A stretch of DNA of 64,000 nucleotides from Ostrea edulis (Eukaryota). Within the stretch, counting starts at the first letter, position 1; every line of letters starts with the position of its first letter. This document shows positions 41,566 to 49,349 of this stretch, in pieces. The notes under the pieces are model-generated. The model did no database searches and was not told where the DNA came from. It saw only the letters and a program-made list of their open reading frames with translations. The translations under genes were made by a program, and so were the position numbers. The stretch is from positions 14,880,001 to 14,944,000 of the forward strand of contig NC_079171.1 of assembly GCF_947568905.1 (NCBI RefSeq). Reading direction: 5' to 3'.

Positions 41566-41950
41566 TGAATTCGGCACCAAAGTCTGGTCAACTCGGCACC
41601 TGTTTTGGTTTGTTTGAATTATGAATTTTTTAGGGGGTATTTGACAATATTGTTTGTCGGTCTACTATACCTAGGGGTGATAATTAGAAATAAACTTTAA
41701 TGAGACAGGTATAATTTAAGATACATCAATTAAGGAATGACTTTGTTTTTATATGAATCAAGAAAAACAAATTATGAGATTCCTTTTGGTATTTAACAAT
41801 ATTGAGTGTTGATCTACTAGATAGGGGTGATAATTAGAAATAAAATGTTAAGAGACAGGTAATATAACATTAACCAATGGAAAACGTTCACTCCCAGACG
41901 CTTGATTTTTATCGGTGGTTAGCTGAACGCTTGAATCAAATGTAAACAAT

Positions 41951-44900
41951 ATGGCGAACCGCTATTTCGCACTGACGGTGGTGCAGTTGAAGAAGGAGCT
42001 TGCCTGTAGAAACGCCACGACGCAAGGAAGGAAGATAGATTTAGTTAGACGGTACATTTAACTTCTTTATTCTGCTGTTTTACCGAAAAGTTTCATTTAA
42101 AAAAACCCTGTAAAGTTAGGCTGTGTTAGCATATAGTCACGATAACTAGATCTGGTATGATTACATACTAGTACGCATTTCATCTCGAAAAAGATATTCG
42201 CACGGGATATTGCTTGACTTCTCAGAGTGTGGTCTACATACTTCTTTGGCTGCTATATTTGGGTTATCAGAATCTTTGTTTTATTTATCAATATAGGAAT
42301 TTTAATCAACAGCTACAAAGAAAGGGATGGGGGGGGGGGGGGGGGGGGGGGTATTCAAAGGCTCATGACTATGCTTGAGTCTCATTCTGTATATAAAGCC
42401 TTTATTGTATATTCTGTCAGCATTCATAAATCTTCAGGGGATCAAACCTGAACATTTACTGTCTTAAAGGTTAAACTTGTCATAAAGTTCCCATCATTTC
42501 TTAAAATGCTACATATATGTATGTAATGTACTCTTAGTCTATCATCTTGAATGATGTATTTGCCCGTTTCAGATTAGAAGCATATGACAGAAATGCCAAT
42601 TTCCAGCAGCCACCTGTTCTGTTACCAGATCCTTTGGACGTAAACTGGCCTACAACAGGATTCCAACAACTCAATTCAGAGCACAGGAAATTACTACCTT
42701 CCATTACAAGGGAACAGATAGAAGCCTATTTTCTCCATAGACTTGCTGGTATTCATGCATTGAAAGCAATGATAGTTTCCGTTTTACTCCATAGTATATC
42801 TCATTCAATTCATTCCTTGCAAATGATAAAATAACTAGTGAAATGAACATTCACAGATCTGAAATTTTTTTCCAGGTGGTACAGTTGCTAAATTATGGGG
42901 GGGGGGGGGTAGTGTTAAATAAAGTCCATGGTTATCTGCATATCATATGCAAAAATTATGGAAAATAAATACTTTTTTTTCAATTCAGGAGAGAGGTCCT
43001 TCCTTACCCTTGAAGAAATTGTTATGCTTAAATAAACATCATTTTATACACCCGGTACAGCACAGGCACTTAAATAACTTACGACCTCTGTATACTAATA
43101 ATAACACATAAGTTATTTACAGAAACAAGTGCCTGTGCTGTACATGCATGTATTATGATTCACTTTTGTCATGAATAAATATATGCTATATCATATTTCA
43201 GGAGATAATGAAGCGGCATGTGATATCAAGGCAGTTAAGAATGGGGAACTATTGTACCAATCCGAGAGAGTTTTGGCATGCTCAGTTATCATTGAAAATG
43301 ATGTATTTTTTACTGGAATAGTCAGTGCAGCCATGAAAAATAAGGTAATTATCAAAAATTTTATTCAACGCAATTTGATATTTAAACGTGGTATACGCTT
43401 TATCAAGTTTTGCTTTAATCAAGAATATTTTAGTAGGTATTTCCAAATAAATATTCCGGGGTATATGAATAAATAGTCAGCAGTATGACACTGAAAAACA
43501 TGTACATGTATGTGTAGTTTGGTCATTTAAAAAATATATACATGTATATTTCAAACCAAATCACTGAATACTTCAAAGAAATCACTGTCTAATTTGAAAG
43601 GTTATTACAGGTCACATACAGCTATAAACTAAGGCTGGAGAAAGAATCTGGAGATGTGCTAAACATGCTTGAAAATTTTATTGAGAATGGTGAAGTGGCG
43701 GTGCAGAAATCATGTACAGAAAATTTGATGATGTTCAACAAGCCAAAGGCATCCCATAAAGGTTGGAATATAAAAATATGCATGGACAACAGCATATAAT
43801 TACATAAAAGTAGAAAATTCAAATTTGAGTCAACTTTTCCATCTTTGTTGATATATACAATGTGTCATATTATATAAAATTGGGATGTACAATTAACAAA
43901 TTCATGTTCTTTTTCATGCATTCAGGATCTCCAGTCAAAGTTGAAAAAATTACAATTGGGAAGAGAAAATCAGCGGTTCATTTGGATGACCCACGACCAG
44001 AAAAGTTTAGGAATGTAGAGGGCATGCAAGACCGGGTCAGAAACCTATTAATCAACTATACATCAAATACTTCTGAAGACATTGCATTTCGTTATCTTTA
44101 TGAGAGAGCAGATTTGAAGGTGACTTACAAATTTTGAAAAGTCAATACTTATTTAATTTAGATTCACCATGGAATGTGACCTTGAATGTAATTAATAATA
44201 CATCAGGGCATTTAGCTTTTTGGTCAGTTTGTCTTTTGAATGCCAAGTGATGGGGCTTCATATGTAAAATAAAATCTTTCTTCTTTCTCACAAAATTTGT
44301 GACCTTGACTTTTTTTTTTATTTCACTTTGCCATTACTTAATATATCACATTGGGTTTTGCATGTTTTTGTTGACCTTCGCATATGACCAATATGTTTTT
44401 AAACCTAACTATAACTTTGCCTACATTTCATGTTTATCTAGTCTTAATCTTATCTTTGAAATAATGTGTATATATAATGTGTACAGTTTTCATACAGTAT
44501 AATAAAATTTTACTTATTTTCAGTCTTCAATTCATGACCACCACTACTTATCACTGCCTTTCACAGAATACTGGGTGGATAAAGCATTACAGGTACTTTC
44601 AAAATCATAAAATAATTTGGAGATGGGACTTTATGGCTAAATGAATTTTTGCTTGCCGCAGAACTGTATAAAACTATATAAGTACATGGCATCAATTATA
44701 TATAAAAAATAGCTTCATGTATTACCTATCAACTAAGATCAGTCATATATATTATGACGATTTATGATTAAAGCCTTTTCTAGATTTTTTCTCCCTTTCA
44801 TTGCACAGGTAACTGAATCAGAGGTGGCAAGTATTGAAAAAGAAACAAGGGGACAATCTACAAATAAGAGATGGTTTGCAGAGAGAATGTGGAGAATCAC

Positions 44901-46338: not shown

Positions 46339-48982
46339 TTATGCAAATTTATCTACAATTGACCTTCTAAAATTGCTTAGCACAAAGCAGATATAAATGA
46401 TTCGGGATCCAAGCTGAATTTTGCTGTGACTAAGTTCATTCTTTAGAATTTTAAAACGTTTTGCCAGACCAATGACCCTTTCTACATGTATGCGTTTTGA
46501 AGCTACACGTCGATCACGTACTACTTCATGGGCTTCAAGTTGGGATTTACCTTTCAAAAATGTTGGAGTATTTACTTGAACATCCTTGTTAGCAAAGAGA
46601 TCTTGCACCATGATGCCTCGATCAGCCATGATGCTGTCGCCTTTCTCAAACATACCATCTTTCAATAAATCAGATCTTTCAATAATCATTCTATCACTTG
46701 CAGACCCACCATAAGCATCGGAAACATATGACACAGCCCCTCTGGGAGTCACTCCAATCATTGCCTTTATAGTATTTCTATGCTTATAATTTGACCAAGT
46801 GATGGACTGAGCATTGACGTCTGACGGCTTCTCAACTGGTATTTCGGTGGCATCCAGTATAACCCTAGTGTTTGCAAACTTCTCTGCAAAATTTGAAGGC
46901 ATAAAATCTTGAACTGTGTCTTGAGATGGCCATATGTTCATTTCCTTTAACTGGAAATACAAAAAATTTATCCAGGTTGTTACAATCCTAGATACAGTTG
47001 ACACTGAAACTTGAAAGAAAAGTGACAATTCAAAATCCTCTTTAGCCTGTCTCAATTTCATCAAAGTTAAAAAAAGTTGATCCCTTGGTTCTAAAGTTAC
47101 ACATTTGTAATCTAATTCATTCACACATGGACCAAGACAGTGATAAAATATCATAAACTGATCGTAATTACTGAAACCAGTGTAATACGAAACAGCATCT
47201 GCATTATCTTTAAAATTTTCAATGGAACATTTCATAGCAAAGGGATTTTGCACAAATTTTTTTCCTAGATCCTGGATTTCTGTTGGTGTTTGATCAGCCT
47301 GCCCAGTCTTTACTGTATGATCTATAACCACTTCTTGCTGTACACCTGTAATATACATGTACAAGTAAAAATAGGTGGATATTTCATGTGTCTTACCAAT
47401 ACAGTAACTCGCTTAAATCTTTAACTGAAAGTACAGAATGTTTTTCAGTTCTTTTGATGTGGTGTATGTTCTTTTTTCCCTTTTGGACTTAACCTAACAT
47501 AACTTAAATGCCCTATCTGCAAATTTCTGACATTGCATATATTTGTGGACTTTTACATTGTGACATAATAGTTAAATGGCCTATCAAAGCATTATTTTAC
47601 ATGCAGTGGATATGGCTAAATGCAGACTTAAAGATTCCTTTATGTCTGTGCATGTGACACAACAAGCACTAAAGTATCATCATTATACCCATGGCCATAA
47701 TGTCAGGTTCCTCCAATGGTTGGTTTCTCCTCTTAAATCTTAACTGTCTTGGGCTTGGGCCAGAAATTTCCTCCCCAGGGATCAGAATGGAAGGAACAGC
47801 ATCTTCTTTAAGGCGAAGGCGGTCAGCTGAAAACAAAATTTCATTATCCTTATAGCAAGATGATGGTTTGCTCTTTCAATTTTCTTAATTTTTGAAAGAC
47901 CTTTTCATTTTTTGTTATGAGCTTGTTACCAAAAAAATAAATACATGAATTAAAAGGCATATTTTAAATCACTTAATTCATGTTTTTGATTGGATAAAGT
48001 TTAAAAACATTTATTTTTTTTGGTCTTCAAAGGCAAAATGGGGTAGGGTTTATTTAAATATATTTCAACTTTTGAATATGCTAATTGTAAAATCTGGCAT
48101 ACAAATGATATTATGAATGAAAACATTAAGGTACAGTGTCCCCTTCCATCTATGTCATACATTTTGTGACTAAAAAGTGAATTGTTAATGCTTTAATCTT
48201 TAAAAAGTCAAAAGATAACTGATTATTGTTGGTAATTAAATTATTCCAACACTAATATTGCTGAATATTTATTGTTAGGACTATTCTTTGCTTTACATAC
48301 ACTTTATGTATGGTTATTTGGTTATCTTAGCAAGATTATTATAATATCACTTGCCTGTCATTACCATTCCCTTCGTCATTCTGAAATATAAAAGAAAACA
48401 GAAAGCAACACGAACACATGCAAATCAAATAAATGCAATGTAATTCAAAGTTCTTGCACTTGTATGTACATACAAGCAATATGAAATCATTAATGCAATA
48501 CAGGATAGGAATTGCATCATCTGAACTGACTTTATTGTTAAGAAGACTGACTTGTTCTAAGAAATAGAGGAAGGAAGCTCTAGTATATAGCCAGAATTTA
48601 TAAGTGATGAGCCCTTTTATCAAAATTTCCAACACGCAACAAGAAGCAATTACTTGGCCTGTATTTATGACATCAAATTGAAACTCAAATTGAATATGAA
48701 TAAAAACGGAAGACAAATATCATCATTAAGTTTATAAAATGTGTTTTACATTGATAATGATCGATATTATGGCTTCTAACCTGACGTGTCCCTGTAATCA
48801 CTTTCGCAGAAGTGAAGGTGGCAAACAACATCTGCATTCTTAGGCTCCCACAACTTTTTTGATTTCGGATCAATTCTTTTGATTGCAACAATCCACTGAA
48901 AACGTTTATATTTGTCTTTTGGGAACTGATGTCCACCATAATTACTACAGAGCGCGAGCGGCACAGAACAACGCTGTGGCAT
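46339..48982 (-). CDS. ISL2EU transposase, 448 aa (THAP zinc finger, HTH, DDE_Tnp_4), 3 exons, apparently intact
   Basis: Exons 48781-48982, 47689-47826, 46339-47345 in phase. THAP: CSVPLALC, HQFP, W, VCHLHF, AVPS. Catalytic motifs ILDATE, GGSASD, MADRG, IHVERVIG. No stops seen. Confidence 0.9.
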
Positions 48983-49349
48983 GTCGACGATCACTTGCTT
49001 CGCGCTTTGTTTACCGTGGATTCAAGCGTCTCAAACGCACAGTTAACCACCGATACCTCATCGTCATAAAATGAAAAACCAAACCGGACGGGTGTTTTCC
49101 ATTAAGGGATGACTTTGTGTTGGTAGGAAGCATCATTCCAAGAGGCGAGTCATCAAAGAGTCTATCTAATTCTCTGTTCCAGAAGAAGGCAAAGTCATAA
49201 ACAGAACTCTTCAATGTTACTTTAAATATGACTTCGTGAAATTCAGGCTTGAATACCCAAGACAGTATGGAGCTGACAAGATACATCTAAATCAGAGCGG
49301 CCTACAGCACTATTTATCCACGATAAAGAAAGTCCTCCGCTACAAATAA

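What the first reader, a model, noticed from the sequence alone, without database searches (positions are those of the whole stretch)
41879..49100. Complete two-gene ISL2EU transposon: intact THAP-DDE transposase facing a phage-recombinase-like YqaJ exonuclease
Seen: AT-flanked GGAAAAC ends, an open 3-exon 448-aa transposase with all DDE motifs, and a convergent 7-exon gene with a SAP domain and lambda-exonuclease/YqaJ PD-(D/E)XK motifs. Established: ISL2EU elements pair a Harbinger-type transposase with a YqaJ ORF2, unlike the Myb/SANT ORF2 of classic Harbingers. To my knowledge the role of this nuclease in transposition has not been shown. Inference: the SAP-tethered 5'-3' exonuclease may resect donor or target ends, so this is a tractable two-component cut-and-resect system whose exon models the ORF track misses.
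Basis: partly seen in the sequence, partly recalled or inferred. Interest (0 to 1): 0.75.

Follow-up and report, generated by a model that had tools for sequence, protein, structure and literature searches.

The report
Decayed copy of a young oyster ISL2EU transposon
This is one 7.2-kb copy of a known kind of two-gene jumping gene (ISL2EU) in the flat oyster Ostrea edulis. Its ends and its transposase reading frame are intact, but its nuclease gene is broken, while two younger sister copies elsewhere in the genome are fully intact.

Summary
The element at 41879-49100 is real and its borders are exact. It has GGAAAAC/GTTTTCC ends, a 2-bp AT target duplication and an uninterrupted paralogous site 150 bp upstream. 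A THAP + HTH_Tnp_4 + DDE_Tnp_4 transposase (3 exons, 448 aa, minus strand) faces a 7-exon SAP/YqaJ gene on the plus strand. All six ORF2 introns are confirmed by spliced contigs from a related organism. These are the published defining features of ISL2EU (Han et al. 2014, 2015), so the kind is already known, and the role of its nuclease is still open.

"Complete" and "intact" do not hold for this copy. ORF2 has an in-frame TAA (45094-45096) upstream of the PD..ExK catalytic motif. It also lacks 69 bp of exon 4 that encode a conserved SWIM-like zinc finger. The THAP finger carries a private 2-residue insertion between its first two cysteines.

The genome is Ostrea edulis. Six sister copies (99.2-99.9% identical) lie at unrelated sites, all flanked by AT. 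The variation is star-like, and the window copy is the oldest of the seven (35 private substitutions). Two copies (L003, L004) have both genes intact.

First readers of this scan already noted two other ISL2EU copies in this genome. The finding is ordinary, though the young family is well suited to experiments.

The parts
41877..41878 (.). left copy of the AT target-site duplication
   Evidence: all seven copies have AT on both sides; the neighbouring repeat unit (41726-41760) has a single AT
41879..41885 (+). left terminal inverted repeat GGAAAAC
41898..41949 (+). left subterminal repeats, including two ACGCTTGA motifs and the inverted-repeat arms I6 and I8
   Evidence: I6, I8; the only three ACGCTTGA in the 64-kb window all lie in the element's termini
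41951..42051 (+). ORF2 exon 1 (SAP domain)
   Evidence: Pfam SAP 4.5e-7; joint 42050/42572 in spliced contigs
42573..42748 (+). ORF2 exon 2
43050..43150 (.). palindromic high-copy repeat inside ORF2 intron 2
   Evidence: depth about 190 against about 20, with opposite-strand joints; present in all seven copies
43202..43344 (+). ORF2 exon 3
43611..43761 (+). ORF2 exon 4, shortened by 69 bp
43664..43665 (+). site of the private in-frame 69-bp deletion, which removes the SWIM-like CxCx9CxH finger
43926..44119 (+). ORF2 exon 5
44524..44592 (+). ORF2 exon 6
44809..45459 (+). ORF2 exon 7 (YqaJ / lambda-exonuclease-like domain)
   Evidence: Pfam YqaJ in two pieces; PDB and fold matches for relatives
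45094..45096 (+). premature TAA stop; the other copies read TCA
   Evidence: (16 of 19 reads and all contigs read C at 45095)
45468..45830 (.). MITE-like high-copy repeat with 38-nt inverted ends, between the two genes
   Evidence: I1; depth 60-270 against about 20; shared by all seven copies
46339..47345 (-). transposase exon 3 (HTH_Tnp_4 + DDE_Tnp_4), stop codon included
47689..47826 (-). transposase exon 2 (C-terminal AVPSI part of THAP)
48781..48982 (-). transposase exon 1 (THAP zinc finger)
48950..48955 (-). private 6-bp insertion: two extra residues between Cys1 and Cys2 of THAP
49007..49055 (-). right subterminal repeats (arms of I6 and I8, one ACGCTTGA)
49094..49100 (-). right terminal inverted repeat (GTTTTCC on the plus strand)
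49101..49102 (.). right copy of the AT target-site duplication
41726..41760 (.). paralogous empty site in the adjacent ~150-bp repeat unit
   Evidence: D5, D7, D8

Best explanation
This is an aged copy of a young, probably still mobile ISL2EU (PHIS superfamily) cut-and-paste DNA transposon family of Ostrea edulis.

How the family works, as far as shown. The THAP-HTH-DDE transposase inserts the element into A|AT|T sites with a 2-nt stagger, giving the AT duplication. A convergent second gene encodes a SAP + SWIM-like + lambda-exonuclease-like (YqaJ, PD-(D/E)XK) nuclease. Recognition of the GG... ends and the subterminal ACGYTTGA-type repeats by the transposase is inferred, not tested.

This copy. 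It keeps both ends and an open transposase frame. ORF2 is dead: it has a nonsense codon before the catalytic motif and has lost the SWIM-like finger. The THAP finger is altered from C-x4-C to C-x6-C. At best the copy can be moved in trans by intact sister copies.

Inferred role of the nuclease (about 40%). It is an accessory 5'-strand processing enzyme acting at the breaks the transposase makes, on the non-transferred strand or in resection of the donor gap. That its catalytic residues are conserved across phyla is shown here. What it does in transposition is not.
For: Domains: (DDE_Tnp_4 4e-42, HTH_Tnp_4, THAP, SAP, YqaJ). One search gives YqaJ at 1.6e-16 on the uninterrupted sister exon.

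Target site: a paralogous empty site within the window, and AT on both sides of all seven copies, with A before in 6/7 and T after in 7/7. This matches the published ISL2EU definition (PMC4482050).

Family: six full-length sisters at unrelated loci, 99.2-99.9% identical. 104 of 110 variable sites are private to one copy. Private substitutions are window 35, L001 22, L005 17, L002 14, L006 8, L004 6, L003 2.

Lesions: ORF2 is intact (517 aa) only in L003 and L004. The window's 69-bp deletion, TAA and 6-bp THAP insertion are all private to it.

Reads: C at 45095 in 16 of 19 reads, and the window's A in 3 of 19, in an independent sample.

Expression: spliced contigs span all six ORF2 introns.

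Conservation: P-D, E-x-K and Q..Q are invariant in 32 relatives. The fold matches LHK-Exo (TM 0.77) and lambda exonuclease, and the N-terminal domain matches ZSWIM8.

Arrangement: the same convergent two-gene layout occurs in a distant genome (L007).
Against: - No direct evidence of current transposition: insertion polymorphism was not tested.
- The RNA-like runs are only guessed to be RNA and come from a different organism label.
- Their contigs run unspliced through transposase intron 2 (record 12).
- The THAP exon and intron 1 were outside the 6,000 letters laid.
- NCBI's models for the sister copies use another first exon and skip THAP.
- A C-x6-C THAP finger might still work.
- The role of ORF2 rests on analogy only.
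Confidence: 0.9

Rival explanations
1. One reading: this very copy is a complete, autonomous two-component element able to make both proteins.
For: Both ends, both genes and all splice sites are present. The transposase frame is open at 448 aa.
Against: TAA at 45094-45096 lies before PDG..EVK. The 69-bp deletion removes a finger motif that is kept in at least 20 of 43 long relatives. THAP spacing is C-x6-C against C-x4-C in the sister copy and six relatives. It is the most diverged of the seven copies.
Confidence: 0.03
2. The two genes are domesticated host genes (NCBI lists the sister copies as 'uncharacterized protein LOC...') and not parts of a mobile element.
For: NCBI gene models exist for the sister loci. 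ORF2 is transcribed and spliced.
Against: There are seven near-identical 7.2-kb units with identical inverted ends, AT duplications and unrelated flanks on several chromosomes, with a star-like mutation pattern and lesions accumulating with age.
Confidence: 0.02
3. Alternative role of ORF2: it does not touch the transposon ends. Instead it steers repair of the emptied donor site. It resects the double-strand break so that it is repaired from the sister chromatid, which restores the element and raises copy number.
For: Lambda-exonuclease-type enzymes make 3' tails for recombination (fold match, PDB matches). SAP and SWIM modules occur in repair and chromatin proteins (established knowledge). 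No annealing-protein domain was found in the model.
Against: No data here separate this from end processing. Cells already have their own resection enzymes.
Confidence: 0.3
4. Alternative role of ORF2: a Tn7 TnsA-like second-strand nuclease that cuts the 5' ends while the DDE protein cuts the 3' ends, forming a heteromeric transposase.
For: TnsA is also a PD-(D/E)XK nuclease (established knowledge). The nuclease catalytic residues are invariant across phyla. The tight convergent pairing is kept in a distant genome. Lambda-exo-like nucleases recur in KolobokE transposons (PMC9587614).
Against: The fold is that of exonucleases, not of restriction-type endonucleases. Related PIF/Harbinger and Spy elements transpose without such a nuclease (PMC4122938, PMC11304231).
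Confidence: 0.15

Closest known systems
ISL2EU group of the PHIS (PIF/Harbinger-ISL2EU-Spy) superfamily, as defined by Han et al. 2014/2015 (PMC4122938, PMC4482050) and Repbase
   Same: AT duplication in an A|AT|T target; inverted ends that start with GG; a THAP + HTH + DDE transposase; a second ORF with a YqaJ exonuclease domain; an animal host.
   Different: At 7.2 kb it is longer than the ~4.8 kb average, because of introns and two embedded high-copy repeats. ORF2 in intact copies also has SAP and a SWIM-like finger, which the papers read here do not name. This copy has a broken ORF2.
PIF/Harbinger elements
   Same: Related DDE_Tnp_4 transposase, a two-gene layout and an AT-rich target.
   Different: Harbinger has a 3-bp TWA duplication, a Myb/SANT ORF2 and no THAP domain on the transposase.
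Spy elements (active cgSpy, PMC11304231)
   Same: The same superfamily, with an AT-rich palindromic target.
   Different: Spy has a single gene, no target duplication and no nuclease partner.
KolobokE transposons (PMC9587614)
   Same: A DDE transposon that carries a PD-(D/E)xK lambda-exonuclease-like accessory nuclease.
   Different: A different transposase superfamily with a TTAA target. The nuclease lies downstream of the transposase domain, not in a separate convergent gene.
Lambda exonuclease / LHK-Exo / Bacillus YqaJ (phage Red-type recombination nucleases)
   Same: Fold (TM 0.61-0.77) and the PD..ExK active-site motif.
   Different: The eukaryotic protein is spliced and fused to SAP and SWIM-like modules. 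No annealing-protein partner is encoded, and its activity is untested.
Tn7 TnsA/TnsB
   Same: A DDE protein paired with a PD-(D/E)XK nuclease, as a mechanistic analogy.
   Different: There is no sequence relationship, and TnsA is restriction-endonuclease-like. This is an analogy only.

Membership tests
ISL2EU (PHIS superfamily) | 2-bp 5'-AT-3' target-site duplication within A|AT|T | tested here: met
   Empty paralogous site. All 7 copies are flanked by AT, with A before in 6/7 and T after in 7/7.
ISL2EU (PHIS superfamily) | terminal inverted repeats of 6-259 bp beginning with GG | tested here: met
   A 7-bp perfect GGAAAAC, plus offset subterminal inverted repeats.
ISL2EU (PHIS superfamily) | transposase with THAP, HTH and DDE domains | tested here: met
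   Pfam THAP 1e-7, HTH_Tnp_4 4e-15, DDE_Tnp_4 4e-42. D164, D241 and E288 of the exon-3 piece are invariant in 10 sequences.
ISL2EU (PHIS superfamily) | second ORF with a YqaJ exonuclease domain | tested here: met
   YqaJ in two pieces in the window, and 1.6e-16 on the uninterrupted sister exon.
ISL2EU (PHIS superfamily) | placement of the DDE core in the ISL2EU clade of a PHIS tree | not tested
   No Repbase reference sequences were at hand. The nearest relatives are THAP + DDE_Tnp_4 proteins of molluscs, brachiopods, nemerteans and tunicates.
Potentially active (autonomous) ISL2EU copy, in the sense of Han et al. 2015 | both ORFs intact | tested here: not met
   The window copy has TAA at 45094-45096 and the 69-bp deletion. 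The criterion is met by sister copies L003 and L004.
THAP zinc finger | C-x2-4-C ... C-x2-H spacing plus the AVPTIF box | tested here: not met
   The window has C-x6-C. The sister copy and six relatives have C-x4-C. CHLH and AVPSI are present. The Pfam score falls from 38.0 to 32.7 bits.
SWIM zinc finger | CxCxnCxH motif | tested here: not met
   The motif is deleted in the window. Sister copies carry CECPAGKGPNGTCKH, for which Pfam SWIM is only E 0.039, below cut-off. The relative's model matches ZSWIM8 at prob 0.99, E 0.036.
SAP domain | Pfam PF02037 above its gathering score | tested here: met
   29.8 bits against a cut-off of 23.9, from exon 1 alone.
Lambda-exonuclease / YqaJ PD-(D/E)XK nucleases | fold and the PD...ExK catalytic motif | tested here: met
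   PDG..EVK is encoded at 45097-45456. P-D and E-x-K are invariant in 32 relatives. Foldseek gives LHK-Exo at 1e-9, TM 0.77.
Lambda-exonuclease / YqaJ PD-(D/E)XK nucleases | 5'-3' exonuclease activity on double-stranded ends | not testable with these tools
   This needs a biochemical assay.

The most novel reading that the evidence does not exclude
The Ostrea edulis family is still transposing today: two fully intact copies differ from the family majority at only 2 and 6 sites. Its SAP-SWIM-YqaJ protein is an obligatory second nuclease of the transposition machinery, either processing the 5' strand at transposon ends (Tn7 TnsA-like) or resecting the donor break. That would be the first eukaryotic cut-and-paste element shown to need its own PD-(D/E)XK nuclease.
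Probability: 0.2. Interest if true: 0.65.

Novelty: new member of a known kind. Interest (0 to 1): 0.25.

Why it matters
The kind of element and its odd nuclease partner are already in the literature, so the locus itself is ordinary annotation.

The family is very young in Ostrea edulis. All seven full-length copies examined here have exact borders, and two natural copies have both genes intact. The seven form a graded series of decay in which ORF2 lesions accumulate with age. This gives a natural, consensus-free starting point for the still unanswered question of what the YqaJ nuclease does in ISL2EU transposition.

It also shows that ORF2 has a conserved SWIM-like module. And it warns annotators that the 'uncharacterized LOC' gene pairs in oyster genomes are transposon genes.

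Tried and rejected
- My first Pfam call used a wrong frame for exon 1 and failed. It was corrected.
- A search for the left end elsewhere in the window found no second copy. The embedded repeats also have no other copy in the window.
- The representatives search gave no hit above 58% identity (top hit 52%), because the library holds one protein per 50% cluster. The O. edulis ORF2 protein itself was therefore not retrieved, and the sister loci were reached through the transposase cluster instead.
- ORF2 is broken in 5 of 7 copies while the transposase frame is open in 7 of 7. I rejected this as evidence of differential selection, because the six sisters were found through an intact transposase protein (ascertainment bias).
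- ACGCTTGA as a binding site: the three hits are confined to the termini, but two of them differ in L001. I keep it only as a candidate.
- The contig for P0141 had no DNA available.
- Read laying was limited to 6,000 letters, so 47800-49100 (transposase intron 1 and the THAP exon) was not covered.
Exons were searched one by one, and a natural full-length relative (P0141) was folded instead.
- No absolute age is given, because I have no oyster mutation rate from a tool.
- Copy number from read depth (16-22 against roughly 1.5 per copy) assumes a genome near 1 Gb. That figure is my recollection, not a tool result.
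Full report
OBSERVATION

The stretch 41879-49100 begins with GGAAAAC and ends with GTTTTCC, and each end is flanked by AT.
- Beyond the 7 terminal bases the ends are not a simple inverted repeat. They share offset subterminal inverted repeats: I6 at 41910-41934 / 49031-49055 and I8 at 41927-41949 / 49007-49029.
- The octamer ACGCTTGA occurs three times in the whole 64-kb window. All three lie in these termini, in inverted orientation.
- The element sits in a local ~150-bp duplication. 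The neighbouring unit (41636-41760) aligns with the left flank plus the right flank and carries a single AT where the element has AT on both sides. This is a paralogous empty site and shows a 2-bp AT duplication inside A|AT|T.

GENES

Transposase, minus strand.
- Three exons: 48982-48781, 47826-47689 and 47345-46339. Both introns have GT/AG and the phases fit.
- Pfam: exon 3 gives DDE_Tnp_4 at 4.2e-42 over profile positions 1-158 of 158, and HTH_Tnp_4 at 4e-15. Exon 1 gives THAP at 1e-7.
- In an alignment with nine relatives from bivalves, a gastropod, a brachiopod, a nemertean and a tunicate, the candidate catalytic D164, D241 and E288 (numbering of the exon-3 piece) are invariant.

ORF2, plus strand.
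- Seven exons: 41951-42051, 42573-42748, 43202-43344, 43611-43761, 43926-44119, 44524-44592 and 44809-45459. All introns have GT/AG, and the total is 1485 nt.
- Pfam: exon 1 alone gives SAP at 4.5e-7. Exon 7 gives YqaJ in two pieces, covering profile positions 2-82 and 88-150.

SPLICING EVIDENCE

Contigs of two runs labelled as probable RNA from a related organism (X19, X20) skip exactly the six ORF2 introns with GT..AG ends. The intron bins have depth near zero in those runs. A 480-aa relative (P0141) matches exons 2-7 collinearly, one match per exon. The ORF2 exon model is therefore confirmed.

The transposase model is less secure.
- The same runs' contigs run unspliced through intron 2 (record 12, 46755-47639).
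- The stretch I could lay ended at 47799, so intron 1 and the THAP exon were not covered.
- NCBI's protein for a sister copy has the predicted exon 2/3 junction (..DIMAMG|VQQEVV..). It starts from another small exon inside intron 1 and lacks THAP.
- The THAP-containing model is supported by homology to 446-454-aa THAP + DDE proteins of mussels and abalones.

WHAT IS BROKEN IN THIS COPY

1. TAA at 45094-45096 interrupts the YqaJ domain upstream of the PDG..EVK motif. At 45095, 16 of 19 reads of an independent DNA sample and all contigs read C, which gives a serine codon. Three reads keep the window's A, so the stop is a real variant of one copy among several and not an assembly slip.
2. Exon 4 lacks 69 bp between 43664 and 43665. 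These bases are present in all six sister copies and in the RNA-like contigs. They encode a CxCx9CxH motif (CECPAGKGPNGTCKH).
   - The same motif lies about 240 residues upstream of the catalytic motif in at least 20 of 43 long relatives.
   - Pfam SWIM on the sister exon is below cut-off (E 0.039).
   - In an AlphaFold model of the relative P0141 (mean pLDDT 81), the N-terminal domain matches ZSWIM8 (prob 0.99, E 0.036).
3. A private 6-bp insertion at 48950-48955 puts two residues between the first two zinc ligands of THAP. This gives C-x6-C where the sister copy and six relatives from several phyla have C-x4-C. The Pfam score drops from 38.0 to 32.7 bits.

THE FAMILY

- The transposase is 99% identical to Ostrea edulis XP_056010013.1, so the genome is the European flat oyster.
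- The transposase protein cluster led to six sister loci (L001-L006) in assembly GCA_947568905.1, on three chromosome records.
- All six are full length (7208-7279 bp). All have unrelated flanks and are bordered AT|GGAAAAC...GTTTTCC|AT. None is the window's locus.
- Pairwise identity is 99.2-99.9%.
- Of 110 variable columns, 104 are private to one copy, which is a star-like pattern. Private substitutions are window 35, L001 22, L005 17, L002 14, L006 8, L004 6 and L003 2. The window copy is therefore the oldest of the seven.
- ORF2 state by copy:
  - L003 and L004: intact, 1554 nt = 517 aa, annotated by NCBI as SAP + YqaJ.
  - L005: a nonsense codon in exon 2.
  - L006: a 25-bp deletion in exon 3.
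  - L002: a 50-bp deletion that removes the exon-3 acceptor.
  - L001: a 2-bp deletion near the 3' end.
- The window's reading frame at the C-terminus is the ancestral one, because relatives end where it ends.
- The transposase frame is open in all seven copies. The sisters were found through that protein, so this is not evidence of selection.
- Read depth of 16-22 at 90% likeness, in about 1.4 billion letters read, suggests roughly ten copies. This inference depends on genome size.
- Two embedded high-copy repeats (43050-43150 and 45468-45830) are shared by all seven copies. They were therefore already in the founder.

THE NUCLEASE

- The uninterrupted sister exon 7 gives YqaJ at 1.6e-16.
- By sequence it matches LHK-Exo (3syy, 2e-7), mimivirus R354 and lambda exonuclease, with GA(S/T)PDG and IE(I/V)KCP aligned.
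- By structure, the relative's C-terminal domain matches LHK-Exo (TM 0.77) and lambda exonuclease (TM 0.61-0.67).
- P-D, E-x-K and Q..Q are invariant in 32 relatives.
- The exhaustive search found 4022 relatives at E <= 1e-3 and 660 at E <= 1e-10.
- No annealing-protein domain is present in the model.
- In another genome (L007, GCA_000697945.5), a 516-aa SAP-YqaJ gene again faces a 459-aa HTH_Tnp_4 + DDE_Tnp_4 gene tail to tail. They lie within inverted repeats that can be read as AT|GGGG...CCCC|AT.

COMPARISON WITH WHAT IS KNOWN

Han et al. define ISL2EU by four features: an AT duplication in A|AT|T, inverted ends of 6-259 bp starting with GG, a DDE + HTH + THAP transposase, and a second ORF with a YqaJ domain. 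They state that the function of the second ORF is unknown (PMC4482050; PMC4122938; PMC9179366).

All four features are met here, so this is a member of a known kind. Lambda-exonuclease-like accessory nucleases also occur in KolobokE transposons (PMC9587614).

First readers of this scan had already noted two other ISL2EU copies in this genome, one described as SAP-SWIM-YqaJ. That note led me to look for the SWIM finger.

MECHANISM

Shown here:
- domain identities;
- the target duplication;
- exact borders across seven copies;
- splicing of ORF2;
- conservation of the nuclease active site across phyla;
- conservation of the convergent gene pair in a distant genome.

Inferred:
- The transposase binds the subterminal repeats and performs cut-and-paste transposition with a 2-nt stagger.
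- The nuclease, tethered by SAP and the SWIM-like module, processes 5' strands at the breaks. I put end processing or donor resection at about 40%, repair steering at about 30%, and a TnsA-like second-strand cutter at about 15%.
- This particular copy cannot supply the nuclease. It could at most be moved in trans.

VERDICT

The copy is a decayed member of the family, not a complete element. The useful by-product is a young oyster family with two natural intact copies.

Noticed in passing
window 43050-43150: A palindromic ~90-bp repeat inside ORF2 intron 2. Its read depth is about ten times that of the element, and reads join opposite strands there. It is present in all seven family copies, so it was carried by the founder element.
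   Followed up: partly
window 45468-45830: A MITE-like 360-bp unit with 38-nt inverted ends (82%) and an (AT)n core, between the two genes. It is a high-copy repeat in the genome (depth 60-270 against about 20). It is also shared by all seven copies.
   Followed up: partly
window 42326-42352 and 42897-42909: Long poly-G runs in ORF2 introns 1 and 2. Their length differs between nearly every pair of sister copies, so they are hypervariable homopolymers.
   Followed up: partly
window 48357-48380 (minus strand): NCBI's 389-aa models of the sister copies start at a small alternative first exon (MTKGMVMT) inside transposase intron 1, with a GC donor, and skip the THAP exon. This may be a THAP-less isoform or an annotation artefact.
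   Followed up: no
window 46755-47639: The RNA-like contigs of organism B run unspliced through transposase intron 2, although the same runs splice all six ORF2 introns. This could be intron retention, antisense read-through from ORF2, or DNA carry-over.
   Followed up: no
window 41636-41878 and 49101-49132: The element inserted into the second unit of a local ~150-bp tandem duplication. Contigs of a related organism also show the uninterrupted unit (loose end at 41871).
   Followed up: partly
protein P0262: A 511-aa relative combines a Mutator-like transposase fragment (PF20700, 6e-31) with a C-terminal YqaJ domain. This hints that the same nuclease type is also linked to MULE elements. P0124 and P0131 carry two YqaJ stretches each.
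   Followed up: no
L003 and L004: The two fully intact copies lie inside the span of large host gene models on the opposite or the same strand: a topoisomerase/TMC-like model for L003 and a RING-finger gene for L004. They are probably intronic insertions.
   Followed up: no
L007:7753-12011: A ~4.3-kb element in another genome (GCA_000697945.5) with the same convergent SAP-YqaJ / HTH-DDE pair. It has 15-nt perfect inverted repeats (CCATGGGGATGGCGA) that can be read as an AT duplication plus a GG-start end. Its transposase model shows no THAP hit.
   Followed up: partly
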